This document shows positions 961-18,158 of a DNA stretch of 64,000 bases, in pieces (the stretch's first letter is position 1; every line of letters begins with the position of its first letter). A model generated the notes under the pieces. That model saw only the letters and a list, made by a program, of their open reading frames with translations, did no database searches and had not been told where the DNA came from. The position numbers and the translations under genes are program-made. The stretch is taken from the IMG/VR virus record IMGVR_UViG_3300012988_000001, positions 1-64,000 of that record; one strand, written 5' to 3'.

Positions 961-1132
961 CATCTTTTTCAAATGAATTTAAACGCTCTGTATCGCTCTA
1001 TAAGCCGTTCAACGAATAAGGCAAGCAAACATATTAGGGCAGTACTTTAAACGCGTTATAGGCTTGCTGGTGGCGTTATGCTTTAGTACTGAAATATAAG
1101 GAAAATGAAAAAAGATTGTCAATCTCTTAAAA

Positions 1133-1307
1133 AGTACTTGACGGATGATCGCAGTACTGGCATAATGTATCACATAGAGCGGCGGGACAGGTTAACTTCC
1201 CTAAGTAGACAGCCAGTAAGTCAGACGAAAATCTGGTGTCGCACTGAAAGAAAGATTGAAAAGAGTTTTAAAAAGTACTTGACAAGCTGGTGGGAAATTG
1301 AGATAAT
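1133..1307 (+). promoter_or_regulatory. Tandem sigma70-type promoters upstream of gene 1358
   Basis: TTGACG(1138) N17 CATAAT(1161) and TTGACA(1279) N17 GATAAT(1302); the second has a Chi site in its spacer. Confidence 0.8.
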
Positions 1308-1357
1308 GACCCCGTAGACAGCAAACAACCTAACTAAACCTTAAGAGGAAATATACA

Positions 1358-1954
1358 ATGACTACTACTAACAACGCAACCGAAGCACGTGTAACCCTGA
1401 AATCTGCTCTTGAAGCTGGCGACGTAAAAGGCTTGGGTGCAATCCTCGCTAAAATCGGTGGCGATAAAGACGGCGTATCAAAATTGGGCTTGACTTTCTC
1501 CCTCGCAGTAACGGCGGCGAAAGATGTACTCAAAGATCAGGCTAAACAGGCCGCCCTTAACGCAGAAGCCGCAGCGAAACGCCGCGAAGATAAAAAGGCA
1601 GCACGTCAGGCAGAGATCGAAGCACAGAACGCAGAGATCAAGGCAGAGAAAGAAAACATGATCAAGTTCCTCATGGACACCGTGAACGGCCTCGGCCTTG
1701 ACCTTGAAGCGGCAGAAGTAGCAGCACAGGCAGCCGTTGACAAAAAATACGGCGTAAGCGAAAAGGCTAAAAAGTACACCTTTACCCGCGTGGCAGTGGT
1801 TGTAGACGGTAAAGAATACGATATGCCAACGTCCGGTAACATGGTTCAAGTGCTTAAAGATGCCATGACCAAAGGCGGCTACGCAACACACAAAGACTTC
1901 ATTCTTGCACACGCTAAAAACGCAGAAGAAGCCGCAGCAGCTTTCGCTGAATAA
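1358..1954 (+). CDS. Ala/Lys-rich coiled-coil protein, probably highly expressed
   Basis: GAGGA RBS, two promoters, own terminator, AAA/GCA/GGC-biased codons. Confidence 0.85.
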   Translation: MTTTNNATEARVTLKSALEAGDVKGLGAILAKIGGDKDGVSKLGLTFSLAVTAAKDVLKDQAKQAALNAEAAAKRREDKKAARQAEIEAQNAEIKAEKENMIKFLMDTVNGLGLDLEAAEVAAQAAVDKKYGVSEKAKKYTFTRVAVVVDGKEYDMPTSGNMVQVLKDAMTKGGYATHKDFILAHAKNAEEAAAAFAE

Positions 1955-1971
1955 GTCAAGTAATTAAAACT

Positions 1972-2000
1972 AAAAGCCTCGCATAATGTGGGGCTTTTTT
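1972..2000 (+). terminator. Intrinsic terminator
   Basis: AAAAGCCTCGCA-TAA-TGTGGGGCTTTTTT. Confidence 0.8.
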
Positions 2001-2020
2001 TATTATAAAAGATTGTAGAA

Positions 2021-2100
2021 AGTACTTGCAATACTTTTCTAGTACTGTATAATGGTTTGCATAGGGGGAAACAACTTCCCCACTAATTAAGGAAAGAATC
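2021..2100 (+). repeat. Promoter-stem-loop-RBS cassette, copy 2
   Basis: AGTACTTGCAA...AGTACTGTATAAT, GGGGGAA/TTCCCC hairpin, TAAGGA. Confidence 0.85.
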
Positions 2101-2466
2101 ATGACACCTTTACAACTGATGGCTGACTCTTATATCACGGCGATGCATTGGGCTAGTACTGATGAAAATGGTGATCCACTCGACAACTACCCTACAGCAG
2201 CAGAGGCAAAAGATATTGCGGCAACTACCTGCAATAACTTCCTGAAAGTCCACGGTGATGATCTATCAATCGTAATGGGGTTACATCCTCATTATGGTTA
2301 TGAGCAAGCGGGGCATGATTTGTTTTTGACTCGCGAAGGTCATGGGGCTGGTTTCTGGGATCGTGATCTTGGTCACTATGGGGACGTGTTTACAAAGTAC
2401 TGTCAATCTATTGGTACGGCTGATCCGTATGTGGGCGATGATGGTTTTGTTTACGTTAATGTTTAA
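2101..2466 (+). CDS. Conserved phage protein (GHDxxLTRxGHGAGFWDR motif)
   Basis: AGHDLFLTREGHGAGFWDRD motif, recalled from phage hypothetical proteins; function unknown. Confidence 0.75.
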   Translation: MTPLQLMADSYITAMHWASTDENGDPLDNYPTAAEAKDIAATTCNNFLKVHGDDLSIVMGLHPHYGYEQAGHDLFLTREGHGAGFWDRDLGHYGDVFTKYCQSIGTADPYVGDDGFVYVNV

Positions 2467-2467
2467 A

Positions 2468-2548
2468 AGTACTTGCATTACTTCTTAAGTACTGTATAAT
2501 GATTTGCATAGGGGGAAACATCTTCCCCCATTAATTAAGGAAATGAAA
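2468..2548 (+). repeat. Promoter-stem-loop-RBS cassette, copy 3
   Basis: Same consensus as copy 2. Confidence 0.85.
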
Positions 2549-2767
2549 ATGGATCTGAATATCAAGATCAACCTCACAGTGAAACAAGTCAATGGTGATG
2601 AAGTTCTCCCACACCACGTAGACGGCCTGCGAGAAAATGCCATTGCTTATATTCTGGAAATGGTTAGCGATGATTGCCGTGAAGGGGAATTTAATGAAGT
2701 AATGGAAAACATCTGTGATGATGAAGAAACAGAATATCGCGGGTACTGGTCGGTTGTAGAGGAATAA
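2549..2767 (+). CDS. Acidic hypothetical protein; paralogue of 11064..11303
   Basis: Shared EVLxHH..L.E.A...I..M...GE...Y.G.WSV pattern; start moved to the RBS-supported ATG. Confidence 0.75.
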   Translation: MDLNIKINLTVKQVNGDEVLPHHVDGLRENAIAYILEMVSDDCREGEFNEVMENICDDEETEYRGYWSVVEE

Positions 2768-2769
2768 TC

Positions 2770-3030
2770 GTGGCTGTCGGATTTGCTAAAGACGGGGCAG
2801 AACAAAACGAGATTATAGCGGTCGTGGAGGCCGCTGTAAGCCACGCAAGGAATCAGCTAGGGGATAACACTACCCCATCGCTTACGCATTGCCTAGACTG
2901 TTCTAAGGCCATTCCTGAGCGTAGGCGTGAAGCTGTTAAGGGTTGCAAATATTGTATTGATTGTCAAGCTGAGTATGATACAATATTCAAACGCAATCCA
3001 CGTAACTGCTGGCACAGGAGTATGAGATGA
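2770..3030 (+). CDS. DksA/TraR-family C4 zinc-finger protein (YbiI-like)
   Basis: CLDCSKAIPERRREAVKGCKYCIDCQ; N-terminus MAVGFAKD resembles YbiI. Confidence 0.9.
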   Translation: MAVGFAKDGAEQNEIIAVVEAAVSHARNQLGDNTTPSLTHCLDCSKAIPERRREAVKGCKYCIDCQAEYDTIFKRNPRNCWHRSMR

Positions 3031-3124
3031 TCTTTAAGTATAACATGGGTTGCTGTTCGCGTCAAGGGTTTTATGCAGTATATTCTGACGGGGTAAACTA
3101 TCGTTATCGGTTTGTCAAGTACTT

Positions 3125-3246
3125 TATGTAGGGGAGAGATCCCCTGTTTATTTGTACAGTACTAAATCATAAGGACGGACTGCTGCACCCTGTGGGCCTG
3201 TTTTTGTCTATGCGTGTATTATGCCAGTACTCCACCAGCTTGTCAA
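3125..3246 (-). ncRNA. CCCACAGGGTGC element, copy B
   Basis: TTGACA(3241-3246) N17 CATAAT(3218-3223); core 3184-3196; hairpin 3131-3144. Confidence 0.6.
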
Positions 3247-3339
3247 CATCTTTTTTTCTGAATATTATTTGAAGAAAGTACTTGCATTACTTTTGCAGTA
3301 CTGTATAATACTTACATCAACCACAGAGAGGAAAGCAAA

Positions 3340-3561
3340 ATGACTAAGTACCTGATGGAAGTTTTTACTACTGAAAACGTAGCAACCAATGTAAAGCGTT
3401 ATTACAAGGTTGTTTGTGGTGTAGGCCGCAGAATCAGTAAGGCAGACTATCAGAAGCTGGAAGATAACGCGGAGGGGGCTTGCTGCTTTAGTACTGTAAA
3501 CACGAAAACCCATATTAAGCAATACAAAACTTTAGAGTTCTATACTGATTTAGTTTTGTAA
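3340..3561 (+). CDS. Hypothetical early protein
   Basis: Own promoter (3282-3309) and GAGGA RBS. Confidence 0.8.
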   Translation: MTKYLMEVFTTENVATNVKRYYKVVCGVGRRISKADYQKLEDNAEGACCFSTVNTKTHIKQYKTLEFYTDLVL

Positions 3562-3562
3562 A

Positions 3563-3642
3563 AGTACTTGCATTACTTCTTAAGTACTGTATAATGATTT
3601 GCATAGGGGGAACAACTTCCCCCACTAATTAAGGAAACGAAA
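3563..3642 (+). repeat. Promoter-stem-loop-RBS cassette, copy 4
   Basis: Promoter nearly identical to copy 3. Confidence 0.85.
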
Positions 3643-3867
3643 ATGGCACTTATCAAGATTATCGAATCAAACGTAGCAGGTCAAGAAAGCACTTTCATTG
3701 AATATGATACTGATTCGTTTGACGAACGTTATGCGGTGCAATACGGTGGATCTGGTATCACGTTCAATGGCACAAAGGAAGGTTGGAAATGTGCGGTTGA
3801 AGATTATTTGTCAAACGTTAAACACCAATTAGAAAGTGCCGCACAAGAAGGTGGCTACCTCGCATAA
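3643..3867 (+). CDS. Hypothetical early protein
   Basis: ORF behind cassette. Confidence 0.8.
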   Translation: MALIKIIESNVAGQESTFIEYDTDSFDERYAVQYGGSGITFNGTKEGWKCAVEDYLSNVKHQLESAAQEGGYLA

Positions 3868-3948
3868 AGTTTTACTCCAGTACTTGACATACTAATCGAG
3901 TACTGGCATAATGACTTTATCGAAACGAAACACTATTAAGGAATTATC

Positions 3949-4242
3949 ATGGCTAAGTATTGCAGAGAGTGCGGCGGGTTGTGTGTAGTAGATGATTTTG
4001 GTGTATCGAATCATATCTATGAAAACGGTGATATTCACCACGTGCTGGATGGTGATCATGTGGCTATCCCTGAGATGGAAGAAACATTGATCAATGAGGA
4101 AGTTTTCGACTTCTGCAAAGATCATTATGAATGTTTCAACGCATACCCTACTGAGTGCGAATTGTCAAACGGTGATGTTTATTCTTTTGCCGAAATGATG
4201 AAAGTACTTTCAGAGGAACAAAAGCAAGAAATTGAAAAATAG
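3949..4242 (+). CDS. Hypothetical protein with N-terminal CxxC
   Basis: CRECGG; own promoter TTGACA(3884) N17 CATAAT. Confidence 0.8.
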   Translation: MAKYCRECGGLCVVDDFGVSNHIYENGDIHHVLDGDHVAIPEMEETLINEEVFDFCKDHYECFNAYPTECELSNGDVYSFAEMMKVLSEEQKQEIEK

Positions 4243-4323
4243 TACTTGCATTACTTTCTGATTACTGTATAATGTTTTGCATAGGGGGAAACATCTTCCC
4301 CCATTAATTAAGAGAATAATATC
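4241..4323 (+). repeat. Promoter-stem-loop-RBS cassette, copy 5
   Basis: Consensus cassette. Confidence 0.85.
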
Positions 4324-4704
4324 ATGGCTAACCAAATCACTCCAGCACAGATCTTTAACAAGTACGAAATTCAGATTGTACTGGTAGAGTATGTTCCATC
4401 CTATGGATGGTCTGACGCTTGCGTAGCCGAAGATGTAGCCGATGCAAAGCGTATCATTAAAGAGTATGCCGCAGAAGGTATCAGCCTGAAAAGTGTTCGC
4501 CGCTGGGTGCTTAACAAAGATGCGTTTCTCTGTCAAGCCCTGTTGAACTTCTGCCGTGACTACTATCGCCGTACTGGTGGACTTTGGCCTAATGAGGTTG
4601 AAGTACTGAAAGCTAACGGGGTGAAGAAATTCACCTTGACTTTGAAAGAAATCGAAGAAGTACTGGGTAATGATTGCCGTTTAGTTACTTCTCAGGCAGT
4701 ATAA
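4324..4704 (+). CDS. Hypothetical early protein
   Basis: ORF behind cassette. Confidence 0.8.
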   Translation: MANQITPAQIFNKYEIQIVLVEYVPSYGWSDACVAEDVADAKRIIKEYAAEGISLKSVRRWVLNKDAFLCQALLNFCRDYYRRTGGLWPNEVEVLKANGVKKFTLTLKEIEEVLGNDCRLVTSQAV

Positions 4705-4769
4705 AAAGTACTTGACACTATACGGGGATATGATATTATATCCCCATCTTAAGCAAAGAAGGTAATACA

Positions 4770-4961
4770 ATGTCTAGAATCTCAAACGCCGCCTTAGATG
4801 CTTTCGCACTGAAAGTAATGGCTGTTAGTACTAACAAGTCATGGGGTACTGATCAGTTTAAACGTCTGGTAATTTGTGCGGGTAACGGCATGACTGTAGA
4901 AGAAACCGCCAAAGAAATCGATGCAATGACTATTGACAAAGATCAGGATAATGGACTATAA
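4770..4961 (+). CDS. Hypothetical early protein
   Basis: Own promoter (TTGACA at 4712) and GAAGG RBS. Confidence 0.75.
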   Translation: MSRISNAALDAFALKVMAVSTNKSWGTDQFKRLVICAGNGMTVEETAKEIDAMTIDKDQDNGL

Positions 4962-5142
4962 TAAGGTTAACAAGCGAGTACTGGAGTTATCAAGGAAAGC
5001 ACGTAAAGAGTACACCTTAGATCGTTCAATTAGCAACTATCATTTAATGCAAGGTGATAAGTTTATTGTTATTGACGAACCGCTGGAAGTAGTGTATATT
5101 GTAGTTAATGCGATGATTCGCGACAAAACGAGGATTAAGTAA
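4933..5142 (+). CDS. Hypothetical protein
   Basis: Overlapping operon ORF. Confidence 0.6.
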   Translation: MTKIRIMDYNKVNKRVLELSRKARKEYTLDRSISNYHLMQGDKFIVIDEPLEVVYIVVNAMIRDKTRIK

Positions 5143-5390
5143 TGCGTACTATCTTTGACCTGCAAGACAAAGGAACTATGGCACGTAGATCAATGGTTAC
5201 TGTAGGCGGGAAACAACACTGGAGCGGTTATGTATGCTTCATTGTTGGCGGGAAAATGTATGAGCGGGTAGTATACCACAAAGAGCTTAATTACATTCTT
5301 TTCCGTAAAGAAGTGATCGCTATCGAACCAGAAGCCCTCAAACCGATTGCAGGGGCTTGGAATAAAGAATCGCTGAATGTATCAGCTTAG
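5142..5390 (+). CDS. Hypothetical protein
   Basis: TAATG coupling; hairpin at 5399-5417 follows. Confidence 0.7.
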   Translation: MRTIFDLQDKGTMARRSMVTVGGKQHWSGYVCFIVGGKMYERVVYHKELNYILFRKEVIAIEPEALKPIAGAWNKESLNVSA

Positions 5391-5440
5391 TTAATTAAAG
5401 GCCGCACAGAGCGGCCTATCGCTCATATGGGGGTATTATA

Positions 5441-5584
5441 ATGAATCCACGCAACATATTAATCAAACCACCAGCAACAAAGGCAGAACGGGCAGAACGC
5501 CGACGCAACCGCATGAAGTCACTTGTAAAGGCTGGCTATTCACGTTCACACGCTTTCAAACTTGCAAAGGAAGAAATAAAATGA
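5441..5584 (+). CDS. Small basic protein (47 aa, not in ORF track)
   Basis: GGGGG RBS; hand translation MNPRNILIKPPATKAERAERRRNRMK... Confidence 0.55.
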   Translation: MNPRNILIKPPATKAERAERRRNRMKSLVKAGYSRSHAFKLAKEEIK

Positions 5585-5704
5585 AACTTTGTCAAGTACT
5601 GGACGAGATTGAAAATATTGTTGACAGAAAACAACAATATGATACACTGTTATCAAGAAGTCAGGCAAATGAAGTTGAAAGGCAACGGATAGAAGGGGCA
5701 GAAT

Positions 5705-6007
5705 GTGAATCGTTATACGCAACCGCAGCACAGGGGAATAAGTACAGCAGCACAACGTCGCAAGCCAGCAAAGACTAAACACAGAAAGTACTTAAGAGAA
5801 CCCGTTCCCGTAGATACTAGCTGGCTGATGGATTATGACGTACAGCATATGTATTTGAATGGGGGATGGTCATTTGGTAACGGTATGATCTGGGGTAGTA
5901 CTGGCAGTGGTAAGAGTAATATCGGTGCAATGTATTTTAGTAAATTGAATGGCTGGACTTCTGCCGCCCCGAAAAAAGATTTTGAATCCCCGTTCAAAAA
6001 GGCTTGA
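5705..6007 (+). CDS. Hypothetical protein
   Basis: GTG start; start uncertain; overlaps ORF 5581..5778. Confidence 0.4.
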   Translation: MNRYTQPQHRGISTAAQRRKPAKTKHRKYLREPVPVDTSWLMDYDVQHMYLNGGWSFGNGMIWGSTGSGKSNIGAMYFSKLNGWTSAAPKKDFESPFKKA

Positions 6008-6072
6008 CACAATACCGGCTTAGTGAGATAATACTTACAAGCCGGAACAAAGGCACATACCCACAGGGTGCG
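6004..6072 (+). ncRNA. CCCACAGGGTGC element, copy C
   Basis: TTGACA(6004) N17 GATAAT(6027); core 6060-6071; converges on copy D. Confidence 0.55.
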
Positions 6073-6109
6073 GAAAAGTATTCAGTACTTGAGAATGATA
6101 ATCATTTAC

Positions 6110-6188
6110 ATCAACAGACGGATTCCTGCACCCTGTGGGCTAGTTGTTTTCATGGCTTTATCATGCCAGTACTGGATAGGTTTGTCAA
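6110..6188 (-). ncRNA. CCCACAGGGTGC element, copy D
   Basis: TTGACA(6183-6188) N17 CATGAT; core 6127-6139 followed by TCCGTCTG. Confidence 0.55.
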
Positions 6189-6220
6189 CTACTTTTTAAT
6201 GAAAAGAATTTGAAAATAAT

Positions 6221-6298
6221 GCTTGCAGTACTTTTAAATTAGCGTATAATGTTTTGCATAGGGAGAGATAATCTTTCCCACTAATTAAGGAAATGAAA
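6221..6298 (+). repeat. Promoter-stem-loop-RBS cassette, copy 6
   Basis: TTGCAG..TATAAT; hairpin variant GGGAGA/TTTCCC. Confidence 0.8.
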
Positions 6299-6664
6299 AT
6301 GGAACGTATCGTTTATGGTCGTGGTGCAAGTGCTGAAGTTGTTCCTGTAGAACTGCTGGCGATGTTAACCGAAATGATTCGCCGTAGTGATATTAGTTTT
6401 CCTCCGTCCGTAATGCCGTATGCTATCAGCTACGAAGTACGCAAGACTCCTAAGTACTGGAAGATTGACCGTGTAGAACTGGATAAAGATACAGGAGAAA
6501 TCCGTCAATATGGGCGTAGCTCTGCTGGTGCTGTAGACTTTGACGGAAACGTGTTTAAGTCTGCTAGTTATAACGCGGTGGCTAAAGGTATTCGCGGGAA
6601 TATCTTTGTTAATAACGGATTTAATGCAATTACTGGTGATGGTTATATCCGTTATTTAAATTAA
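6299..6664 (+). CDS. Conserved phage protein (GNVFKSASYNAVAKGIRGNI motif)
   Basis: Motif resembles a widespread phage hypothetical family (G.v.K.AS..A.AK..R.N); function unknown. Confidence 0.75.
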   Translation: MERIVYGRGASAEVVPVELLAMLTEMIRRSDISFPPSVMPYAISYEVRKTPKYWKIDRVELDKDTGEIRQYGRSSAGAVDFDGNVFKSASYNAVAKGIRGNIFVNNGFNAITGDGYIRYLN

Positions 6665-6667
6665 GAA

Positions 6668-6750
6668 AGTACTTGCAAAGTAATCAAAACAGCGTATAAT
6701 GTTTTGCATAGGGGGAGATAAACTCCCCCACTATTAAGAGAAGAAATATC
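6668..6750 (+). repeat. Promoter-stem-loop-RBS cassette, copy 7
   Basis: Consensus cassette. Confidence 0.85.
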
Positions 6751-6990
6751 ATGGCACAGAAAATCACTCGCACCGAAGTTAATCATTATCTGGCAGTACT
6801 GAATGGTGTATTGGCAGCGATGGGTGCAAAGTATCGTTATAAATTGCAACCTGTTGCTGGTGGTTATACACTGGAGAAGTACAATACAGAGGGCGATCTG
6901 GTCGATACTTGTATTGGTGGTCAATCTTTACGTGCAGTATATGAGATCATTCGTTTTTCTGCAAACATGATCGGGGATAACGTGAAGTAA
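6751..6990 (+). CDS. Hypothetical early protein
   Basis: ORF behind cassette. Confidence 0.8.
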   Translation: MAQKITRTEVNHYLAVLNGVLAAMGAKYRYKLQPVAGGYTLEKYNTEGDLVDTCIGGQSLRAVYEIIRFSANMIGDNVK

Positions 6991-7038
6991 TTATTATCAA
7001 AAGTACTCTTGACAATACTTTGAGAGTACTTTATAATA
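6987..7038 (+). repeat. 52-bp promoter block identical to 10981-11032
   Basis: GTAATTATTATCAAAAGTACTCTTGACAATACTTTGAGAGTACTTTATAATA occurs at both sites. Confidence 0.85.
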
Positions 7039-7069
7039 CTTACATCACTTAAGCAAAGAGAGAAACAAA

Positions 7070-7378
7070 ATGGAAAAGACTAAACTGTTCGTAGCTCAGA
7101 TTACCCTGCGTCATGGCGAATATGAAACGCAAGTTCGAAAACTGATCCTTGCGAAGTCGCAAATTGAAGCCGAACTGTTCGCCCGTAGCAATGAAGGAAT
7201 GGCGATCTATGACGGCTCATGCATCGAAGATGGTAACAGCTATCAGGAAGAAGGTCAACCAAATACATGGTACTTCTGCGGCGGGGATTGGTGCGTTACT
7301 CTGGGCGTGATCTGGGAGATGGAAGATCGCGAAATGGCGAAACAAGTAATTGCTAGCGGCTTAGTATCTTTCTTGTAA
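7070..7378 (+). CDS. Hypothetical early protein
   Basis: Own promoter and RBS. Confidence 0.8.
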   Translation: MEKTKLFVAQITLRHGEYETQVRKLILAKSQIEAELFARSNEGMAIYDGSCIEDGNSYQEEGQPNTWYFCGGDWCVTLGVIWEMEDREMAKQVIASGLVSFL

Positions 7379-7390
7379 TTACTTTCAAAA

Positions 7391-7900: not shown

Positions 7901-7911
7901 AGTTTAAAAAG

Positions 7912-11453: not shown

Positions 11454-11546
11454 TTATTATCAAAAGTACTTGTATTACTGGAGCGAGTACTTTATAATAC
11501 TTACATCAACTAAGCAATAACGCTTAATTAAACCGAGGACAGGAAA

Positions 11547-11684: not shown

Positions 11685-11892
11685 TAAAGGGGCGTACAAT
11701 GATTAAACCAATAGATCCTATTGTACGCCTTTATTACAACACGTACAAACCATCAGATCTCAAAAGGCTGGTGGAGGAAAGAAAAGAAGTACAAAAAGAT
11801 TTAAAAAGTACTTGCAATAAAATCGATATCAAAGTATAATGTTTACATCAGCTAGGGAATGGTCCACTAGCTAACTAACAGGAAATAAAATC

Positions 11893-12258
11893 ATGGCTAT
11901 CATCTCCGCTTTCTTCTCTTCTCGTAAACTGGCTCGTGATGCTAAAGTTGATCTGGGTGGTAAGATTGTTGATAATGGTACAACCGCACCAGCGGGACAG
12001 CGTTGGGAACTCCAGTACGAAGCAGCCCCGAAATCAGCAGCCATCGCAGAACTGGCGGCGATCATGGAAGCTGAAGTAGTGGACATGAAACTTGAAGAGG
12101 TTAAACCTCGTGATCTGATGGGCTTGCCACGCCCTGTAAGTAAACACCAAACGGCTCGCGAATATGTACTCAAGGATCGCAAAAACAATCCGGTACGCGT
12201 ACAGGTTCGCCGCAGTAAAACCAATGCCCTGTTAGCCGCTCACATGGCGAAAGCATAA
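11893..12258 (+). CDS. Hypothetical early protein
   Basis: Own promoter TTGCAA N17 TATAAT, AGGA RBS, host-like codons. Confidence 0.85.
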   Translation: MAIISAFFSSRKLARDAKVDLGGKIVDNGTTAPAGQRWELQYEAAPKSAAIAELAAIMEAEVVDMKLEEVKPRDLMGLPRPVSKHQTAREYVLKDRKNNPVRVQVRRSKTNALLAAHMAKA

Positions 12259-12304
12259 CCGAACATGGGGGAGAACTTTCTCCCCCTCTTTTAAGAGAAA
12301 GAAC

Positions 12305-12556
12305 ATGAAAAAGAAAGTACAGTTAGTTAACGGTAGTTTCATGCGATTGCATTATAAACCCATTCAAAGAGTCATTGATCGAGGTGTAGAAGTAGCTAAT
12401 AAGTATGTACTAGGAGAGATCCGACCTCGCAAACTTAATAACGGAAAGTTTGAAGTACTGGAAGTTTCACGCACAGAACGTATTGTAATTGACAAAGACA
12501 AAAACATCCACTTTCTGAGCCACGAAAAGTACAATGATTTCATCGAAAAATATTGA
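12305..12556 (+). CDS. Hypothetical protein
   Basis: Preceded by a promoterless hairpin-RBS half-cassette (GGGGGAGAA/TTCTCCCCC). Confidence 0.75.
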   Translation: MKKKVQLVNGSFMRLHYKPIQRVIDRGVEVANKYVLGEIRPRKLNNGKFEVLEVSRTERIVIDKDKNIHFLSHEKYNDFIEKY

Positions 12557-12563
12557 TAAAAAA

Positions 12564-12645
12564 GGGTTGACTTCGGTTGGCCCTTTTGCTATTATATACG
12601 CATAGAAACAAACTAGCCCACAGGGTGCATAAATACGTCTATAAT
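12564..12645 (+). promoter_or_regulatory. Terminator/promoter hybrid plus CCCACAGGGTGC element, copy G (leader of gene 12666)
   Basis: TTGACT(12567) N17 TATTAT(12590); core 12617-12629. Confidence 0.65.
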
Positions 12646-12665
12646 TTACCGAAAGGAGAAACCAT

Positions 12666-13202
12666 ATGCCCGGACAATTCCGATCAAAAGCAGGTGCTAC
12701 GCTCGCAGGTCATAGCGACAAGTGGAGCGACGAGAACCGCAGAACAAACAGCCACAACGCAGGACAGGGTTCACGAGGTTCCCGCAACCAAGGCACTGGT
12801 GCACAAGGCAAAGCAAACACCGTAGCATCACAAGGTATCGACACATCCAGAATGAAACCAGAAGAGAAGCTACGCTATTTTAATTCTCTTGGATTACTTG
12901 GGAACAAACCAGAACCAGAAATCGAAGTAGAGCCACCAAAACACCACCAGCAAGCACCAGTAGACAGCAAGACACTAATCAGTAACCTACGCGAACAATG
13001 GTCCGAGATCTTCGGAGAGAACGCAGGACTGATGAAAGGCATCATTAACACAATGAAGCAAGTCCCACCAGCTAAGTTTAAGAAAGCAGCACAGGCAGCA
13101 TATAGAGCCACCGCAGAGATCACAGCAAAGACTGATGATATCTATGATATACAAGAATACATCCAGAACGCAATCAATGAGATTGCCTATCAAGATCTAT
13201 AA
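12666..13202 (+). CDS. Hypothetical protein with disordered G/N/Q-rich N-terminus; T-poor coding strand
   Basis: AGGAG RBS; only 2-6 T per 60 nt in several lines. Confidence 0.8.
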   Translation: MPGQFRSKAGATLAGHSDKWSDENRRTNSHNAGQGSRGSRNQGTGAQGKANTVASQGIDTSRMKPEEKLRYFNSLGLLGNKPEPEIEVEPPKHHQQAPVDSKTLISNLREQWSEIFGENAGLMKGIINTMKQVPPAKFKKAAQAAYRATAEITAKTDDIYDIQEYIQNAINEIAYQDL

Positions 13203-13269
13203 AAAATAAAGGGTTGACTTCGGTTAGCCCTTTTGTTATTCTATCAGTACAACAACAGAGGACAACACA

Positions 13270-13551
13270 ATGAAACATATACTCACCATTCTCGCAGTAC
13301 TGGCATCATTCAACGCAGCAGCCACGACACCACCGCATGAAGTTAGATGTACGTCCTCCGGTATTCCTAGCATCATTGTATTAGCTGATGGTGTACTGAT
13401 GGATGATATGGAGCGTCTTATTGCAACAGAGATTCACACTGGAATCTTTGAATCTATTGACGAATACGGCAAAGTAACATATACTATTCATGGTAACAAT
13501 ATTATCATGAAAGGAAACGGATTCACTAAAGAGTATGTCTGTGATCTATAA
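13270..13551 (+). CDS. Putative exported protein
   Basis: Signal-peptide-like MKHILTILAVLASFNAAA. Confidence 0.7.
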   Translation: MKHILTILAVLASFNAAATTPPHEVRCTSSGIPSIIVLADGVLMDDMERLIATEIHTGIFESIDEYGKVTYTIHGNNIIMKGNGFTKEYVCDL

Positions 13552-13726
13552 AATTGTACTCAAAGGCTTAATGCCCGGTAGCGAAGTCTGGGAACAGCAC
13601 ACAGCATTCATCTCATCACAACCCGGTGATGACATAGATGGCATGATACTTGCACACATCTATGAATGGCGTAGCAAAGCAGGATACTACAAAGTGAAAT
13701 ATATGTCAAAAGAGGTAATCCAATGA
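13535..13726 (+). CDS. Hypothetical protein
   Basis: Operon ORF. Confidence 0.55.
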   Translation: MSVIYKIVLKGLMPGSEVWEQHTAFISSQPGDDIDGMILAHIYEWRSKAGYYKVKYMSKEVIQ

Positions 13727-13751
13727 GATAACTTTACAGAGGATTATCTTA

Positions 13752-13967
13752 ATGCCAACTCATTCTATTATTTTAAATGGTAAACGTTTCAAGATGACTG
13801 AGGGAGTTTTACAAAGTACTAACACACAATTGATCCTTGACAAATTGACTAAGGATGAATGTGATGCTATACTACGTGAAGCAAATAAAATTAAATCCAC
13901 CGTAGCAGCACATCCGGTCAAACGTCAACTGTTACAGGGAATTATTATGGGGTGTTTGCGTAAATGA
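13752..13967 (+). CDS. Hypothetical protein
   Basis: GAGGA RBS. Confidence 0.65.
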   Translation: MPTHSIILNGKRFKMTEGVLQSTNTQLILDKLTKDECDAILREANKIKSTVAAHPVKRQLLQGIIMGCLRK

Positions 13968-14142
13968 TTTATCAAGAGATTGTCAAGCGATTAAAAGAGC
14001 TTGACTTTGGTAATGCAATACGTTATGCTAGTGCAAATGCATTCGAACTGCAAGCACTGCACGATCAAGGTCATAGCATTGAGTCGCTGGTGGAGATCTG
14101 TTTAAACCATAAATAACCTTGTAACCTTACAAGGAGTATAAC

Positions 14143-14412
14143 ATGGTTAAAACAGATTTAAACACGGTCCAATCATGGCACAAAGTCCAGTTAGACCAAC
14201 TGCCCCAACTTTTAAAAGATCAAGGGTTCCAATATGTAAAAGCATTCAGTACTGATGAACATAGAATCTTTGTATCACAGGATGGTAACTACAAATTGAT
14301 TATACATAAAAACGTAGGGAAACTATATCCTACTAAAAATAATCAGTGCTTGCACACATTTGCAATTGTTGCACCAATGCCAAAATTAAATGACGTTAAA
14401 AGGGTTGACTAA
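14143..14412 (+). CDS. Hypothetical protein
   Basis: AAGGAG RBS. Confidence 0.75.
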   Translation: MVKTDLNTVQSWHKVQLDQLPQLLKDQGFQYVKAFSTDEHRIFVSQDGNYKLIIHKNVGKLYPTKNNQCLHTFAIVAPMPKLNDVKRVD

Positions 14413-14461
14413 GGTCGGCCCTTTTGCTATTATAACTACATCGAAACGAAGGAGTTAAATC

Positions 14462-15052
14462 ATGTACGTCACTAAAGCAGCCAAAGCACATCTTAAAGCA
14501 CTGGACCTGTTACCTACTAATAACCAAATGCTTAAGTACTGTAGAGAGAATCTTACTCGTTTGGGTAAAGGTTCTAGTCGTGAAGTGTTTGCACTCTCCG
14601 ATACGCTGGTGGTCAAGGTGGCACTGGGCGGCGTAGGTGTGAAGCAGAACGAGAATGAGATCCGAGTGTGGAATCTCGTCAGCTATGACTACATCGGAAT
14701 GAAACGTTCCTTTGCTAAAGTACTGGTAAATGAAGGACACTGGAAGGACTTCTATATTGTAATGGAACGTCTGGAAACTAACACAGTGTCACGCAGCATC
14801 TTTAATACTAAAACAGTGCAGCAATGGCGTACTGATCGCAAAGCAATGCATCCTACTGCCAAGCGTATTTTTAAAGATGTACAAGACACCGACGACAACG
14901 CGTTTACCAATAACATTGCAGACATTACGCCTCGCAATATGGGAACATCAAAATCAGGTGTTGTCAAGATGCTTGACTATGGTTTTAGTACTCCCATATG
15001 GAATGGTATCGCGAAAGGCAAACTAAAAAATCGCGAATTACTTATTCGTTAG
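14462..15052 (+). CDS. Protein-kinase-like (Ser/Thr kinase fold) protein
   Basis: LGKGSSREVF Gly loop, VVKVA Lys, NENE Glu, VMERL hinge, DITPRNMG catalytic loop, LDYG (DFG-like). Confidence 0.75.
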   Translation: MYVTKAAKAHLKALDLLPTNNQMLKYCRENLTRLGKGSSREVFALSDTLVVKVALGGVGVKQNENEIRVWNLVSYDYIGMKRSFAKVLVNEGHWKDFYIVMERLETNTVSRSIFNTKTVQQWRTDRKAMHPTAKRIFKDVQDTDDNAFTNNIADITPRNMGTSKSGVVKMLDYGFSTPIWNGIAKGKLKNRELLIR

Positions 15053-15113
15053 TACTTGACAGATAATAGCTGGTGGGATATAATTATCCCATCAACTACA
15101 GAGGAAAGCAATC

Positions 15114-15335
15114 ATGGGATTCAAAGTTCGCCAGTGGTCAACAACAAACGCTCGCCCATTCGATGTAGTGTACGAAGACCACGCACTAAACAACGTACAC
15201 TATCAGCCAAACGTAGAGTTTAGTACTCCAGAACTGGCAGAGCATCACATGCAATCACTGGTTAAAAACTTCACAGATGATAGTCTATCATTCATTCGTG
15301 ATCACTGGCCTACCGATGGTGCAGTAACAGAATAA
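15114..15335 (+). CDS. Hypothetical early protein
   Basis: Own promoter with a Chi site in the spacer; GAGGA RBS. Confidence 0.75.
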   Translation: MGFKVRQWSTTNARPFDVVYEDHALNNVHYQPNVEFSTPELAEHHMQSLVKNFTDDSLSFIRDHWPTDGAVTE

Positions 15336-15661
15336 CAAAAGAAAGGGTTGACTTCGGTCGGCCCTTTTGTTATTATATCAGTACATCCAAAGGGGGACAT
15401 ATGAAATATATTTTGATGGTAGGTATGATGATTTTATATCAACGCCAAACAGCATTCCCATTGCTGGGAATTATTGCAATTCTTACTGGTTTATTGATTT
15501 GGAGATGGTAACATGGCTAAGGTCACGATTGAAACAGTAAAAGAAACCATTAAGTTAATGGATGAATTGAACGGCACGGATCATTATAATACTATTGATT
15601 GGGATAATCCCAGTACTGAATTACCTGCTTTCTTAACTGATAAGAAAGATGATAAAAAGGA

Positions 15662-15760
15662 TTGACACATAACTGCCAATGAGATATTATATAGTCATTG
15701 GCAGATAAGCTACTAACCCACAGGGTGCAGTAGTCCGTCTATAGTTTGAGTACTTACAAT
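15662..15760 (+). ncRNA. CCCACAGGGTGC element, copy H
   Basis: TTGACA(15662) N17 TATTAT(15685); core 15717-15729 then TCCGTCTATAG. Confidence 0.6.
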
Positions 15761-16153
15761 ATTGTAAATGATCTTGACCGCCGAGGCAATTTGATCAATA
15801 ATTGATCAAGAAATTTTAGAGTACTGGATTATGGTTGAAATTATGAAACAATATGGTAATGTATTACTGAAAACGGAGAACGACTATTATGTAGTAAGAT
15901 CGGGCCGCGAAAGTATTCAAACACAAAACGCTTTCCATGCTCTGGTATGGTATGCAAAATTTATCATGAAGGAAAACAAATGAGAATACCTGCTCTTATC
16001 CTTCTAGTACTCGTCGTGCTGTATGTAGCTAATGCTATACAGGATGAAAGCAGTATTCAGTACTGGAATGAAATGAAATATTATTGGAATAAGTCTTGAC
16101 ATAGCTGGTGGACTATCCTATAATATATACATCTTAACAAAGAGGATTACCAA

Positions 16154-16333
16154 ATGGTACACGTAGATCTGGAAGTACAAAAGAAAGTCTGGTACGATAT
16201 CGGCCTGAAAGGTATTAACTGGTCTGACGCTCAATACGCTGCACTCAAAGCACTTGACCGTTATCAACGTGAACAAGTACTTGAGGCACACAAGAAAGGT
16301 GTGAATGACCGCATCGATCTTGAAGTACTGTAA
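16154..16333 (+). CDS. Small hypothetical protein (59 aa)
   Basis: Own promoter with Chi in the spacer, GAGGA RBS, terminator at 16341-16378. Confidence 0.7.
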   Translation: MVHVDLEVQKKVWYDIGLKGINWSDAQYAALKALDRYQREQVLEAHKKGVNDRIDLEVL

Positions 16334-16450
16334 ATCCTAAAAGGCCAATAACACATTGGCCTTTTTTTCGTTTATACACTAAATCAATTACGATTTCAAG
16401 AAATTTTAGAAAGTACTTTAAATCGAAAATAGTTTATATAAATTTCAGAA

Positions 16451-16536
16451 AGTACTTGCAATCAATATTAGAAAGCGTATAATGTATTACATCGAGAGGG
16501 GAAATGGTTCTACTCTCAAACGTTAAGGAAATGATT
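16451..16536 (+). repeat. Promoter-stem-loop-RBS cassette, copy 12
   Basis: GAGAGGGGAA..TTCTACTCTC variant. Confidence 0.8.
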
Positions 16537-17067
16537 ATGTACTCTTCAGTTCAAACTATGGTTAACGTCAACGCTGCTACTGGTATCGCTTATGGTTACA
16601 TCAACGCTAACAATGTAAACGGTGATGTACTGCATGATATCTTCTGCAATGGCATCGATTCACGCAGATTAGAATGTGATATCGAGTTTGCTTCAAAACA
16701 TGGTTTCGTTACTCCTGAGCAGGAAGAGAATGAATTATTCAGTACTTACCTCGCTCGCATTCAAGATGTAATGCTTGACTTCCTTAACAATCTGCAAGAT
16801 GAGGAAGGTAATGATCTCACAGAACTGGTGGAAGAACATGATCGCCAGTACGAAGAGTTTACAGGTGATATCCACGTAGCAACAATCGATGACACTACTG
16901 TTATCTATAACACTGACAGTAATACTATCTGCGTGATGGATAGCAAAACTGTAGGGAAGTACTTCTTATGCTCCCCTTGCTGCCCTAACGCTGGTGATTT
17001 GGATAGTGCTGGTGGCGATGTAGAAACTTACGATGTACCAGCTAGCTGGCGTGAAATGGACTACTAA
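16537..17067 (+). CDS. Acidic conserved phage protein (C-terminal CSPCCPNAGDLD)
   Basis: ORF behind cassette. Confidence 0.8.
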   Translation: MYSSVQTMVNVNAATGIAYGYINANNVNGDVLHDIFCNGIDSRRLECDIEFASKHGFVTPEQEENELFSTYLARIQDVMLDFLNNLQDEEGNDLTELVEEHDRQYEEFTGDIHVATIDDTTVIYNTDSNTICVMDSKTVGKYFLCSPCCPNAGDLDSAGGDVETYDVPASWREMDY

Positions 17068-17103
17068 TATAGCGAATGAGCGATGATATGTCAAGTCTAA
17101 AAA

Positions 17104-17186
17104 AGTACTTGCAATCATCGCTCAGTACTGTATAATGATTTGCATAGGGAGAGAATAGTTTTCTCCCAATAGTAAGGAATACTGTT
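17104..17186 (+). repeat. Promoter-stem-loop-RBS cassette, copy 13
   Basis: GGGAGAGAA-tagtt-TTCTCCC variant. Confidence 0.85.
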
Positions 17187-17471
17187 ATGTTTAACGGTCA
17201 TATTGCAAACTTCGCATTACGTCGCGGTGTAGAGATTCAAGTAGTCGAAGCAAATGAAATCGACAATGAATACAATGAATTGTGGTTCTACGCCGCAGAC
17301 AATGACTGTGAGCCAGAAATGATGTACATCCAAAACAATGATGGTACTTTATCATTCAAAGGTAAGTTAAACAAATCACTTGAAGATCTGCCAGCGTGGA
17401 TCGATAGCAAAGATAAACTGAAAAAAGTTATCTGCTATCTGTCAGATATGCTCGCTGCCGAAGCAATGTAA
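17187..17471 (+). CDS. Hypothetical early protein
   Basis: ORF behind cassette. Confidence 0.8.
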   Translation: MFNGHIANFALRRGVEIQVVEANEIDNEYNELWFYAADNDCEPEMMYIQNNDGTLSFKGKLNKSLEDLPAWIDSKDKLKKVICYLSDMLAAEAM

Positions 17472-17483
17472 TCTTTACAAAAC

Positions 17484-17585
17484 AGTACTGGACATAACAA
17501 GCCAGTACTGTTAATATGTAGTCATTGGCAGATAAGCCGTAGCCCACAGGGTGCAGAGATCCGTCTATAGCTTTTAAGTACTAAT
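17484..17585 (+). ncRNA. CCCACAGGGTGC element, copy I
   Basis: TGGACA(17489) N17 TAATAT; core 17543-17555 then TCCGTCTATAG. Confidence 0.55.
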
Positions 17586-17607
17586 TAATTTTAAAAAGAA
17601 TGTAGAA

Positions 17608-17694
17608 AGTACTTGCAAGGTAGTTTGGTTAGTGTATAATGTTTTACATCGAGAGGGGGAAATGGTTCTCCCTCCGGTCACTAGGAGATTCACC
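17608..17694 (+). repeat. Promoter-stem-loop-RBS cassette, copy 14
   Basis: Leader nearly identical to copy 11. Confidence 0.85.
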
Positions 17695-18093
17695 ATGTTC
17701 ACATTAAATCATTTCTCTGATGTTGTTGCTGTTGCTAAAACTTTCGGCATCGATGCTCTGAGATACGCGATGGATAACCGTACTGTATCACCGGGTGCGA
17801 CTCGTACCATCTGTGAATGCATGGCGTGGTCTAAAAACCAAACCATCAACATTGATAACTTCAATGATGGCAATAACGAATTCAGCATTGATGCTGTGTT
17901 TACCAGCGAGAAGATTGCAGGTCTGTACATCACTGGCCTGAATGAGATCCGTATCTCTCGTACTGGCTTAGGCTCATTCTACGGCGAAGTACGTGAAGCA
18001 ATTGAGCAGGGTGTCATTACTCCTGAGCAGTTAAACACTGTACTGAAAGAGATCGCGTTGCGTAATGAAGCAGCGAAAGCGTTTGGGTTCTAA
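17695..18093 (+). CDS. Hypothetical early protein
   Basis: AGGAG RBS. Confidence 0.8.
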   Translation: MFTLNHFSDVVAVAKTFGIDALRYAMDNRTVSPGATRTICECMAWSKNQTINIDNFNDGNNEFSIDAVFTSEKIAGLYITGLNEIRISRTGLGSFYGEVREAIEQGVITPEQLNTVLKEIALRNEAAKAFGF

Positions 18094-18158
18094 TACCAAA
18101 CATCAAACACAAGGCCACTAGCACAACGCTGGTGGCTTTATCTATTGGAGGTAATACC

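What the first reader, a model, noticed from the sequence alone, without database searches (positions are those of the whole stretch)
1066..18135. Dense, strand-biased cluster of RecBCD Chi sites confined to the early module
Seen: 15 GCTGGTGG in the first 18.2 kb (12 on +, 3 on -). Nine + copies occur between 10.0 and 18.2 kb, about one per kb. By eye I found only 3 in the remaining 46 kb (41317-, 44855-, 49575+). The random expectation at about 42% GC is roughly 0.3 for 18 kb. Five sit in promoter spacers (1286, 3232, 10055, 15069, 16104) and one forms a hairpin arm (18128), so they were placed where sequence is free. Established: RecBCD recognises Chi when approaching from its 3' side, which attenuates degradation and loads RecA, and Chi limits CRISPR spacer acquisition. 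Inference: + strand Chi sites would act on RecBCD entering from a DNA end to the right of 18.1 kb. This suggests host-self mimicry protecting a genome terminus, or stimulation of recombination between the repeated cassettes.
Basis: partly seen in the sequence, partly recalled or inferred. Interest (0 to 1): 0.8.

Follow-up and report, generated by a model that had tools for sequence, protein, structure and literature searches.

The report
Chi hotspots packed into phage terminal repeat
The first 18.5 kb of this jumbo-phage genome is most likely its long terminal repeat, and it is loaded with the host's RecBCD "Chi" signal, probably to stop the host nuclease at the DNA ends and make the two repeat copies recombine.

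Summary
The window has 20 exact GCTGGTGG sites. Sixteen lie in 1066-18135 (12 on +, 4 on -), against 0.2-0.8 expected. Chi is the most over-represented octamer there.

The window is the first 64 kb of a circularly closed, 366-kb uncultivated jumbo-phage contig. The Chi-rich stretch matches the PhageTerm-mapped 19.7-kb direct terminal repeat (DTR) of Klebsiella phage fENko-Kae01, and similarity stops within 4 nt of that repeat's end. The "early module" is therefore the DTR, predicted at about window -2280 to 18508. A genome end is predicted about 370 bp right of the last Chi.

Four other related genomes also concentrate Chi in or around the DTR. In the complete fENko genome the density is 0.71/kb in the DTR and 0.056/kb elsewhere. 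Seven of nine alignable sites are conserved, against a 19% background.

The sites fall in all three reading frames, in promoter spacers and in a terminator stem, so codon bias does not explain them.

My best reading is a set of functional RecBCD Chi sites that protect the genome ends and promote recombination between the two repeat copies. Phage P1 and the LLS-type lambdoid phages are the known analogues. I found no report of this in jumbo phages. The + strand bias is no stronger than composition predicts. Function is untested.

The parts
1..18508 (+). Window part of the predicted ~20.8-kb direct terminal repeat (DTR). It continues ~2.28 kb upstream of position 1 across the circular contig junction. 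It holds early genes, all on +, most with their own sigma-70-like promoter.
   Evidence: Blastn colinearity with fENko-Kae01 positions 2158-19740, inside its PhageTerm-mapped DTR 1-19736; similarity ends at window 18512 (PMC11218385). GC is 0.405 against 0.373 beyond. Contig k-mer depth is 1.5-1.8x higher than in the DNA to the right. The contig is closed by a 123-nt overlap.
1066..1073 (+). Chi, intergenic
   Evidence: Conserved at fENko 3490.
1286..1293 (+). Chi in the spacer of a + promoter-like site (1279-1307, TTGACA-17-GATAAT)
   Evidence: Conserved at fENko 3711.
3232..3239 (-). Chi in the spacer of a - strand promoter-like site (3246-3218)
5468..5475 (-). Chi, intergenic
6856..6863 (+). 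Chi inside ORF 6751-6990
   Evidence: Conserved at fENko 8065, inside ENKO_019, a protein detected by mass spectrometry.
10055..10062 (+). Chi on + lying in the spacer of a - strand promoter-like site (10070-10042). This promoter looks like a second copy of the 3246-3218 promoter (by eye), with the octamer inverted.
11272..11279 (+). Chi in the coding sequence of ORF 11064-11303 (read as W-W)
11767..11774 (+). Chi just upstream of a promoter, possibly inside a doubtful 46-aa ORF
12944..12951 (-). Chi on the antisense strand of ORF 12666-13202, a virion structural protein family
13065..13072 (-). Chi on the antisense strand of ORF 12666-13202, in a different frame from 12944
14086..14093 (+). 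Chi near the 3' end of ORF 13964-14116
   Evidence: Conserved at fENko 15834.
14605..14612 (+). Chi in the kinase-like ORF 14462-15052 (read as L-V)
   Evidence: Not conserved in fENko.
15069..15076 (+). Chi in the spacer of a consensus promoter (15056-15084, 12 of 12 matches)
   Evidence: Conserved at fENko 16840.
16104..16111 (+). Chi in the spacer of a consensus promoter (16096-16124, 12 of 12 matches)
17008..17015 (+). Chi in ORF 16537-17067 (read as A-G-G)
   Evidence: Conserved at fENko 17826.
18128..18135 (+). Chi nearest the predicted right terminus. It is the 3' arm of a 12-bp terminator-like hairpin (18111-18139).
   Evidence: Conserved at fENko 19354, where the 5' arm differs but still pairs with it.
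18366..18571 (.). Non-coding, AT-rich stretch that contains the predicted inner DTR boundary and right genome terminus (~18508)
   Evidence: Gene layout changes from spaced, individually promoted genes to tightly packed genes.

Best explanation
The sites are functional RecBCD Chi sites that selection has concentrated in the phage's ~20-kb direct terminal repeat.

The virion DNA is linear and carries one repeat copy at each end. Host RecBCD loads on such ends.
- Entering at the right terminus, about 370 bp from Chi 18128, it meets up to 14 correctly oriented Chi before it leaves the repeat.
- Entering at the left terminus, it meets 4.

At Chi, RecBCD stops destroying the 3'-ended strand and loads RecA. 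The result has two parts. Unique DNA is spared. A recombinogenic 3' tail is also made, and its only homologous partner is the other repeat copy, on the same or a sister genome. Pairing gives circles or head-to-tail concatemers and can prime replication.

Shown: the enrichment, its restriction to the repeat, its conservation, and its placement in DNA free of coding constraint.
Inferred: the exact termini in this phage, RecBCD involvement, and the recombination outcome.
For: - Enrichment: 18 Chi in the 20.8-kb repeat against 0.3 expected, the top octamer at z 32.5. Only the exact octamer is enriched.
- Restriction to the repeat: 4 Chi in the other 47.5 kb (p 9e-7). In the complete fENko-Kae01 genome, 14 in 19.7 kb against 18 in 320.6 kb (p 8e-10).
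- Relatives: in vB_Ec-M-J, 11 in the DTR and 0 in the next 28.5 kb. In CBB, 9 in the DTR and 3 in the next 22.5 kb. In the uncultivated relative L005, 13 around the kinase gene and none in the last 7 kb of the locus.
- Boundary: homology to fENko ends within 4 nt of its mapped repeat end.
- Conservation: 7 of 9 alignable sites are kept at 71-78% nucleotide identity, against 19% for any octamer (p 2e-4).
- Placement: the sites lie in all three frames, on the antisense strand of a gene, in promoter spacers, and in a hairpin arm whose partner arm differs in fENko yet still pairs with an unchanged Chi.
- Position: + sites lean toward the right end of the repeat and - sites toward the left (Mann-Whitney p 0.01).
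- Precedents: phage P1 and the LLS-class lambdoid phages (bioRxiv 10.1101/2021.07.08.451572; PMC12315714). Authors of an Asteriusvirus genome paper already propose DTR-mediated circularisation (PMC13070987).
Against: - No functional data exist for any phage of this group.
- The termini of this particular phage are inferred by homology. Only assembled contigs, not raw reads, were available, and they gave a 1.5-1.8x depth ratio rather than a clean 2x with read-start peaks.
- Relatives carry their own recombination genes: RecA/UvsX-like and UvsY in fENko, and UvsX, gp46/47 and UvsW in CBB (PMC5259590). In lambdoid phages, Chi abundance goes with the absence of such genes (PMC12315714).
- The + bias is no greater than composition predicts and is not specific to the repeat.
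- The repeat is also the host-transcribed early region, so 'repeat' and 'early' cannot be told apart by position.
- The host of this phage is unknown.
Confidence: 0.55

Rival explanations
1. Protection only. The Chi array simply blunts RecBCD degradation of the incoming ends during the first minutes, until phage functions take over. This would stand in for a T4 gp2-type end protector or a Gam-type inhibitor. Repeat-to-repeat recombination would be carried out by the phage's own UvsX/UvsY system, not by RecBCD and RecA.
For: - Relatives encode RecA/UvsX-like and UvsY proteins (PMC5259590).
- No gp2 homologue is listed among the T4-core genes of CBB.
- No anti-RecBCD family was found among 20 DTR proteins.
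- A Chi lies about 370-380 bp from the right end in the window phage and in fENko.
Against: - Protection alone needs Chi near the ends, not spread over the whole 20 kb and stopping at the repeat boundary.
- RecBCD that has recognised Chi still unwinds the DNA and still degrades the 5'-ended strand (established knowledge of the enzyme).
Confidence: 0.22
2. The octamer is recognised by something other than RecBCD, for example a phage or host regulator of the early transcription units. Its identity with Chi would then be a coincidence.
For: - Five of the 18 strongest promoter-like sites carry the octamer in their spacer (p 3e-7).
- The cluster coincides with the host-RNA-polymerase early region.
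Against: - The position inside the spacer varies, and in one of two look-alike promoter copies the octamer is inverted.
- About half the sites are inside genes, in different frames and on both strands, or in a terminator arm.
- The enrichment recurs in relatives from at least three named host genera of Enterobacterales, all with this exact octamer.
- No flanking consensus exists.
Confidence: 0.1
3. The main benefit is evasion of CRISPR adaptation. Chi close to the ends limits the RecBCD degradation products that feed Cas1-Cas2.
For: It is established that Chi bounds spacer-acquisition hotspots. The first Chi lies within about 0.4 kb of the predicted right end.
Against: - One or two end-proximal sites would be enough; 18 sites spread over the whole repeat are not needed.
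- Many Enterobacterales hosts have inactive or no CRISPR adaptation (general knowledge, not tested here).
Confidence: 0.05
4. The cluster is a by-product of composition, codon usage or amplification of a repeated cassette.
For: The repeat is slightly richer in G+C (0.405 against 0.373) and is full of repeated promoter cassettes.
Against: - Markov models up to order 3 expect fewer than 1 site.
- One-mismatch neighbours are not enriched.
- Flanks are unrelated.
- All three reading frames are used and most sites are non-coding.
- The sites are conserved beyond background.
Confidence: 0.02

Closest known systems
Phage P1 (and P7, D6): about 50 Chi sites concentrated in or near the terminally redundant ends (Subramaniam and Smith, bioRxiv 10.1101/2021.07.08.451572)
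   Same: - Chi density is well above that of the host genome.
- Chi is concentrated where the packaged DNA ends and terminal repeats lie.
- Both orientations occur, each denser toward its own end.
- The proposed role is RecBCD/RecA-dependent recombination of the terminal repeats into a circle.
   Different: - P1 is a temperate, headful-packaging phage with variable ends spread over 20-40 kb.
- Here the ends are fixed and the repeat is an exact ~20-kb block in a virulent ~390-kb jumbo phage.
- The Chi array stops at the repeat boundary.
- These phages carry UvsX/UvsY-type recombination genes.
LLS-class lambdoid phages: 8-25 Chi clustered at the right cos end, about 7:1 in the active orientation, with growth aided by RecBCD (Genome Res 2025, PMC12315714)
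   Same: - The cluster is terminal and mostly co-oriented.
- Chi ranks among the top octamers.
   Different: - LLS-type phages lack a recombination module and any anti-RecBCD function, and have cohesive ends with no long repeat.
- The jumbo-phage relatives have their own recombinase genes.
- Here the cluster sits in a duplicated region.
- RecBCD dependence has been shown for LLS and is untested here.
Phage T5 terminal repeat (10.2 kb; first-step-transfer DNA carrying pre-early genes)
   Same: A long, exact direct terminal repeat that carries host-transcribed early genes.
   Different: T5 has only 2 Chi in its 10.2-kb repeat, about the E. coli average, with no cluster.
E. coli chromosomal Chi
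   Same: The same octamer, with a bias toward the G-rich, co-directional strand.
   Different: The chromosome has roughly 0.2 Chi per kb (my own knowledge). The repeat has 0.87 per kb, about four times denser, in DNA of only 40% G+C.

Membership tests
Enterobacterial RecBCD Chi site | Exact octamer 5'-GCTGGTGG-3' | tested here: met
   20 exact matches. One-mismatch variants are not enriched.
Enterobacterial RecBCD Chi site | The host has a RecBCD enzyme that recognises this octamer | tested here: inconclusive
   The host of this uncultivated phage is unknown. All cultured relatives examined infect Enterobacterales: Klebsiella, Escherichia, Salmonella, Pectobacterium.
Enterobacterial RecBCD Chi site | Orientation-dependent action on an enzyme entering from a double-strand end on the 3' side | not testable with these tools
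   The geometry fits. The predicted right terminus at ~18508 lies 3' of all + sites. Activity needs an enzymatic or genetic assay.
Phage terminal Chi cluster (P1 / LLS type) | Chi far more frequent than chance and ranked among the top octamers | tested here: met
   18 observed against 0.30 expected, z 32.5, rank 1.
Phage terminal Chi cluster (P1 / LLS type) | Sites clustered at the packaged DNA end or ends | tested here: met
   The cluster matches the region homologous to the mapped DTRs of fENko-Kae01, vB_Ec-M-J and CBB. The termini of this phage itself are inferred, not mapped.
Phage terminal Chi cluster (P1 / LLS type) | Orientation bias toward the open end beyond what composition gives | tested here: inconclusive
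   The ratio is 14:4 here and 12:2, 9:2 and 7:2 in relatives. Markov models predict a ratio of 1.2-4.6:1 here. The fENko unique region is 12:6 (Fisher p 0.41). The window-phage contrast of 14:4 against 1:3 gives p 0.08. The positional skew of + against - sites is modest (p 0.01).
Phage terminal Chi cluster (P1 / LLS type) | No phage recombination module and no anti-RecBCD function (LLS class A) | tested here: not met
   fENko-Kae01 is annotated with RecA-like and UvsY proteins and several nucleases. CBB has UvsX, gp46/47 and UvsW (PMC5259590). These genes lie outside the window, so they were not checked in this phage. No anti-RecBCD family was found among 20 DTR proteins.
Phage terminal Chi cluster (P1 / LLS type) | Phage growth or recombination depends on RecBCD and Chi | not testable with these tools
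   No experiment on this phage group was found in the searchable literature.
Long direct terminal repeat of Rak2-like / Asteriusvirus-like jumbo phages | Homology and colinearity with an experimentally mapped DTR, ending at its boundary | tested here: met
   Window 1-18512 aligns with fENko 2158-19740. The upstream 2.3 kb, in L006, aligns with fENko 83-2280.
Long direct terminal repeat of Rak2-like / Asteriusvirus-like jumbo phages | Two-fold read depth and read-start peaks at the boundaries | tested here: inconclusive
   Only assembled contigs could be laid on the window. K-mer depth is 13.5 against 7.4, 15.8 against 9.4 and 10.3 against 6.7 in three runs, a ratio of 1.5-1.8x. No read-start information was available.

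The most novel reading that the evidence does not exclude
These jumbo phages may deal with RecBCD using DNA alone. A Chi array exactly as long as the 20-kb terminal repeat would turn the host nuclease into the enzyme that circularises or concatemerises the genome. That would make RecBCD a required host factor even though the phage has its own UvsX/UvsY. Because no protein inhibitor of RecBCD is used, the phage would also escape defence systems that fire when RecBCD is inhibited. The unexpected placement of Chi in the spacers of the strongest early promoters could then reflect a functional link between RNA polymerase occupancy and RecBCD at these sites.
Probability: 0.2. Interest if true: 0.75.

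Novelty: new variant of a known kind. Interest (0 to 1): 0.6.

Why it matters
Long exact terminal repeats are typical of this large group of jumbo phages, several of which are being considered for therapy. How their ends survive host nucleases and how the repeats are joined is not known. Authors currently only speculate that the genome circularises (PMC13070987).

A conserved, repeat-restricted Chi array gives a concrete hypothesis that can be tested by mutation. It predicts that RecBCD and RecA status will affect infection. It extends the recently recognised class of phages that use Chi beyond temperate P1 and lambdoid phages, to virulent phages that have their own recombinases.

It also offers a practical marker. 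A sharp step in Chi density locates the repeat boundaries in assemblies where the repeat has been collapsed into a circle.

Tried and rejected
- **Codon or peptide bias.** Rejected. Coding sites use all three frames and the antisense strand, and about half the sites are non-coding.
- **A longer motif or an amplified cassette.** Rejected. Flanks are 27% identical on average. Only the promoter-spacer sites share promoter consensus.
- **Degenerate Chi-like motifs and the Chi sequences of other bacteria.** Not enriched.
- **Strand bias as independent evidence for a right-end-only role.** Not supported. Composition predicts a similar ratio, and the fENko unique region also shows 2:1.
- **Mapping the termini from public reads.** Only assembled contigs were served. 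They span 18.5 kb, as expected for the left repeat copy, and give only a 1.5-1.8x depth ratio.
- **Window position 1 as a physical end.** Rejected. The contig starts inside a gene and closes on itself with a 123-nt overlap.
- **Search for a RecBCD inhibitor among the DTR proteins.** PHROGs scans of 20 proteins returned almost only 'unknown function'. About 30 smaller ORFs were not scanned.
- **T5 as a precedent.** It has no Chi cluster in its repeat.
- **The search for related loci with the kinase-like protein.** It returned only 2 loci, so a wide survey of IMG/VR was not possible this way.
- **Literature searches for Chi in jumbo-phage repeats.** Nothing found.
- **A relative on a non-enterobacterial host as a natural control.** Xanthomonas phage XacN1 was considered but not run.

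Full report
**1. The observation**

An exact search finds 20 GCTGGTGG sites in the 64-kb window. Sixteen lie between 1066 and 18135.
- On +: 1066, 1286, 6856, 10055, 11272, 11767, 14086, 14605, 15069, 16104, 17008, 18128.
- On -: 3232, 5468, 12944, 13065.

Four lie in the remaining 46 kb: 41317-, 44392-, 44855-, 49575+.

Dinucleotide shuffles of the whole window give 0.72 sites, with a maximum of 3. For the first 18.5 kb, Markov models of order 0-3 expect 0.13-0.69 on + and 0.06-0.15 on -.

**2. What the region is**

The kinase-like protein at 14462-15049 hits IMGVR_UViG_3300012988_000001, a 366,160-bp contig, at 100% identity and at the same coordinates. The window is therefore positions 1-64000 of that contig.

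The contig starts inside a gene. Its last 123 nt repeat its first 123 nt. It is thus a circularly closed assembly, and position 1 is not a physical end.

The nearest cultured relatives share about 76-79% nucleotide identity over parts of the window. They are Klebsiella phage fENko-Kae01 and Salmonella phages Munch, PHA46, 7t3 and SE_PL. Asteriusvirus coliphages and Pectobacterium phage CBB are more distant.

In fENko-Kae01, a 19,736-bp direct terminal repeat (DTR) was mapped with PhageTerm and is annotated at both ends of the record (PMC11218385). Window 1-18512 is colinear with fENko 2158-19740, and detectable similarity stops there, 4 nt past the fENko DTR end. The 4.3 kb that precede window position 1 on the circle (locus L006) align with fENko 83-2280 and run across its left DTR boundary.

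The DTR of this phage is therefore predicted at about window -2280 to 18508, roughly 20.8 kb. The upstream part holds two more + Chi. The 2.06 kb of unique DNA before it holds none.

Other evidence points the same way:
- G+C falls from 0.405 to 0.373 at the boundary.
- Gene layout changes from spaced, individually promoted genes to tightly packed ones.
- In three public runs the k-mer depth of contigs lying in the repeat is 1.5-1.8 times that of contigs to the right.

Raw reads were not available, so the ends themselves were not seen.

**3. Strength and specificity of the enrichment**

Over the whole predicted repeat there are 18 Chi (14 on +, 4 on -) in 20,788 nt. An order-2 model expects 0.30. 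Chi has the highest z-score of all octamers, at 32.5.

The other 47.5 kb available for this phage hold 4 Chi (p = 9e-7).

All 24 single-substitution neighbours together occur 14 times in the repeat. Of 20 CTGGTGG heptamers, 18 are full Chi sites. The 30-nt flanks are unrelated, with a mean identity of 27%; only the promoter-embedded sites resemble each other. The signal therefore belongs to the exact octamer.

**4. Placement**

Roughly half the sites are non-coding, in a region where about a quarter of the DNA is non-coding by my rough estimate from the fENko annotation. The coding sites are read as W-W, L-V, A-G-G, H-Q and P-P-A, so they use all three frames and both strands.

Five sites lie wholly inside the 17-nt spacers of promoter-like sites that match TTGACA-N17-TATAAT at 11-12 of 12 positions. 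That is 5 of the 18 strongest such sites. The expectation is 0.16 (p = 3e-7), or p = 7e-6 against a null restricted to non-coding DNA. A sixth spacer-embedded Chi lies in the upstream part of the repeat.

The offset inside the spacer varies. Two - strand promoters, at 3246-3218 and 10070-10042, look by eye like copies of one another and carry the octamer in opposite orientations in the same slot.

Chi 18128 is the descending arm of a 12-bp hairpin (18111-18139; -19.3 kcal/mol; z = -5.4) followed by a U-rich tract. In fENko the partner arm differs at two positions yet still pairs with an unchanged Chi.

**5. Conservation and spread**

Nine window Chi fall in blocks that can be aligned to fENko at 69-78% identity. 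Seven are identical octamers at the same position. Only 19% of all aligned octamers are conserved (p = 2e-4). The remaining sites are lineage-specific, which suggests turnover under selection for number.

I rebuilt the complete fENko genome from eight fetched pieces. It has 14 Chi in the 19.7-kb DTR (0.71/kb) and 18 in the 320.6 kb of unique DNA (0.056/kb), a 12.6-fold difference (p = 8e-10).

| Genome | Chi in DTR (+ / -) | Chi in adjacent unique DNA |
|---|---|---|
| vB_Ec-M-J (Asteriusvirus; DTR 1-21525) | 11 (9 / 2) | 0 in next 28.5 kb |
| CBB (Mimasvirus; DTR 1-22456) | 9 (7 / 2) | 3 in next 22.5 kb |
| Uncultivated relative L005 | 13 (11 / 2) around the kinase gene | 0 in last 7 kb of the locus |

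Phage T5, which also has a long DTR, has only 2 Chi in 10.2 kb.

**6. Orientation and position**

Plus-strand sites dominate: 14:4 here, and 12:2, 9:2 and 7:2 in the relatives. The G-rich + strand alone predicts a ratio of 1.2-4.6:1 here. The unique part of fENko shows 12:6 (Fisher p = 0.41), and the window-phage contrast of 14:4 against 1:3 is also not significant (p = 0.08). Relative to expectation, both orientations are enriched about 20-50-fold.

Across four genomes, + sites lean toward the right part of the repeat (median relative position 0.65) and - sites toward the left (0.35). The Mann-Whitney p is 0.01, or 0.03 without fENko.

The last + Chi lies 373 bp from the predicted right end here, 382 bp in fENko, and about 1.4 kb in vB_Ec-M-J and CBB. 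fENko and vB_Ec-M-J also share a palindromic pair, CCACCAGC-N4-GCTGGTGG, about 0.5 kb from the left end.

**7. Mechanism**

RecBCD loads at blunt duplex ends and recognises Chi on the 3'-ended strand. Afterwards it spares that strand and loads RecA (established knowledge; summarised in PMC12315714).

- A virion DNA with the repeat at both ends offers RecBCD entering at the right end up to 14 active Chi before it leaves the repeat. With an illustrative recognition chance of 30% per site, at least one is recognised 99% of the time.
- Entering at the left end, it meets 4 active Chi, giving about 76%.

The resulting 3' tail is homologous only to the other repeat copy. This explains why sites outside the repeat would be of little use and why the array stops at the boundary. 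Invasion of the other copy yields circles or head-to-tail concatemers and can prime synthesis into unique DNA.

This is the mechanism proposed for P1 (bioRxiv 10.1101/2021.07.08.451572). It is close to that shown for LLS-type lambdoid phages (PMC12315714). It would also provide a DNA-level basis for the circularisation that authors of an Asteriusvirus genome paper have suggested (PMC13070987).

Which end enters the cell first, and whether the sites matter at injection, replication restart or packaging, cannot be decided from sequence.

**8. Difficulties**

- fENko carries RecA/UvsX-like and UvsY genes and several nucleases. CBB has UvsX, gp46/47 and UvsW (PMC5259590). In lambdoid phages, Chi abundance goes with the absence of such genes. 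A protection-only role in the first minutes is therefore a serious rival.
- The CBB paper lists no T4 gp2-type end protector. PHROGs scans of 20 repeat-encoded proteins found no anti-RecBCD family. Both results are weak negatives.
- The repeat is also the host-transcribed early region, and the strong association with promoter spacers is not fully explained. The simplest reading is that spacers are the least constrained part of very compact intergenic cassettes, but a functional link cannot be excluded.

**9. Novelty**

Terminal Chi clusters are known in P1 and in LLS-type lambdoid phages. I found no paper that mentions Chi or RecBCD in connection with the repeats of these jumbo phages. The genome papers for fENko-Kae01, CBB and fEgEco12 do not.

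I rate it a new variant of a known kind. It has the same cis element and probably the same enzyme. The setting differs: virulent jumbo phages with exact 20-kb repeats and their own recombinases, an array that matches the repeat in extent, and sites built into promoters and a terminator.

Noticed in passing
window 1-18500 (and fENko-Kae01 DTR, L001:1-19736): The palindrome AGTACT is extremely frequent. It occurs about 5 times per kb in the repeat and 2-3 per kb in the rest of the window, against about 0.24 per kb expected. fENko has 122 copies in its DTR and 7 in the next 6 kb. It often directly abuts the -35 hexamer (AGTACTTGACA or AGTACTTGCAA), which suggests an upstream promoter element or a protein-binding site.
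   Followed up: partly
window 296-383 and dozens of other intergenic sites in 1-18500: Intergenic cassettes of 85-100 bp are repeated many times. Each holds a promoter, a 5'-UTR hairpin (for example GGGGGAA-loop-TTCCCCC) and a ribosome-binding site. They cause cross-matches all over the fENko repeat and create contig joints in public assemblies, for example 17149 to 17594.
   Followed up: partly
window 3218-3246 (-) and 10042-10070 (-), with terminator-like hairpins at 3128-3147 and 9951-9969: Two look-alike minus-strand promoter-like sites score 11 of 12. Each points into a nearby, possibly bidirectional, terminator about 70-90 nt away. They could make short antisense or intergenic RNAs.
   Followed up: no
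L001:484-503 (fENko-Kae01) and L003:588-607 (vB_Ec-M-J): A palindromic double Chi, CCACCAGC-N4-GCTGGTGG, lies about 0.5 kb from the left genome end. It can form an 8-bp hairpin and is shared by phages from two different groups. The window phage instead has a single + Chi in a promoter spacer at the corresponding place (L006:2377).
   Followed up: partly
window 1-18500: The motifs CACCCTGTGGG and CCCCTATGCA each occur about 10 times in the repeat, with z-scores of 16-20. Their role is unknown.
   Followed up: no
L002:25808-26052 (fENko-Kae01 ENKO_525c): Three Chi sites lie within 250 bp on the coding strand of one virion-associated gene. This is the only local cluster outside the repeat in that genome.
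   Followed up: no
window 15500-21499 in public runs X2 and X16-X19: Nearly the same phage sequence (94-99% of sampled words) is present at about 10x depth in several runs from 2018-2020. They come from different studies, and all are labelled with one organism rather than as metagenomes. That organism may be the host or a carrier of the phage.
   Followed up: no
window 12666-13202: A protein of a 'virion structural protein' family (phrog_16530, E = 2e-61) is encoded inside the early, terminally repeated region. Its fENko counterpart was detected in virions by mass spectrometry.
   Followed up: no
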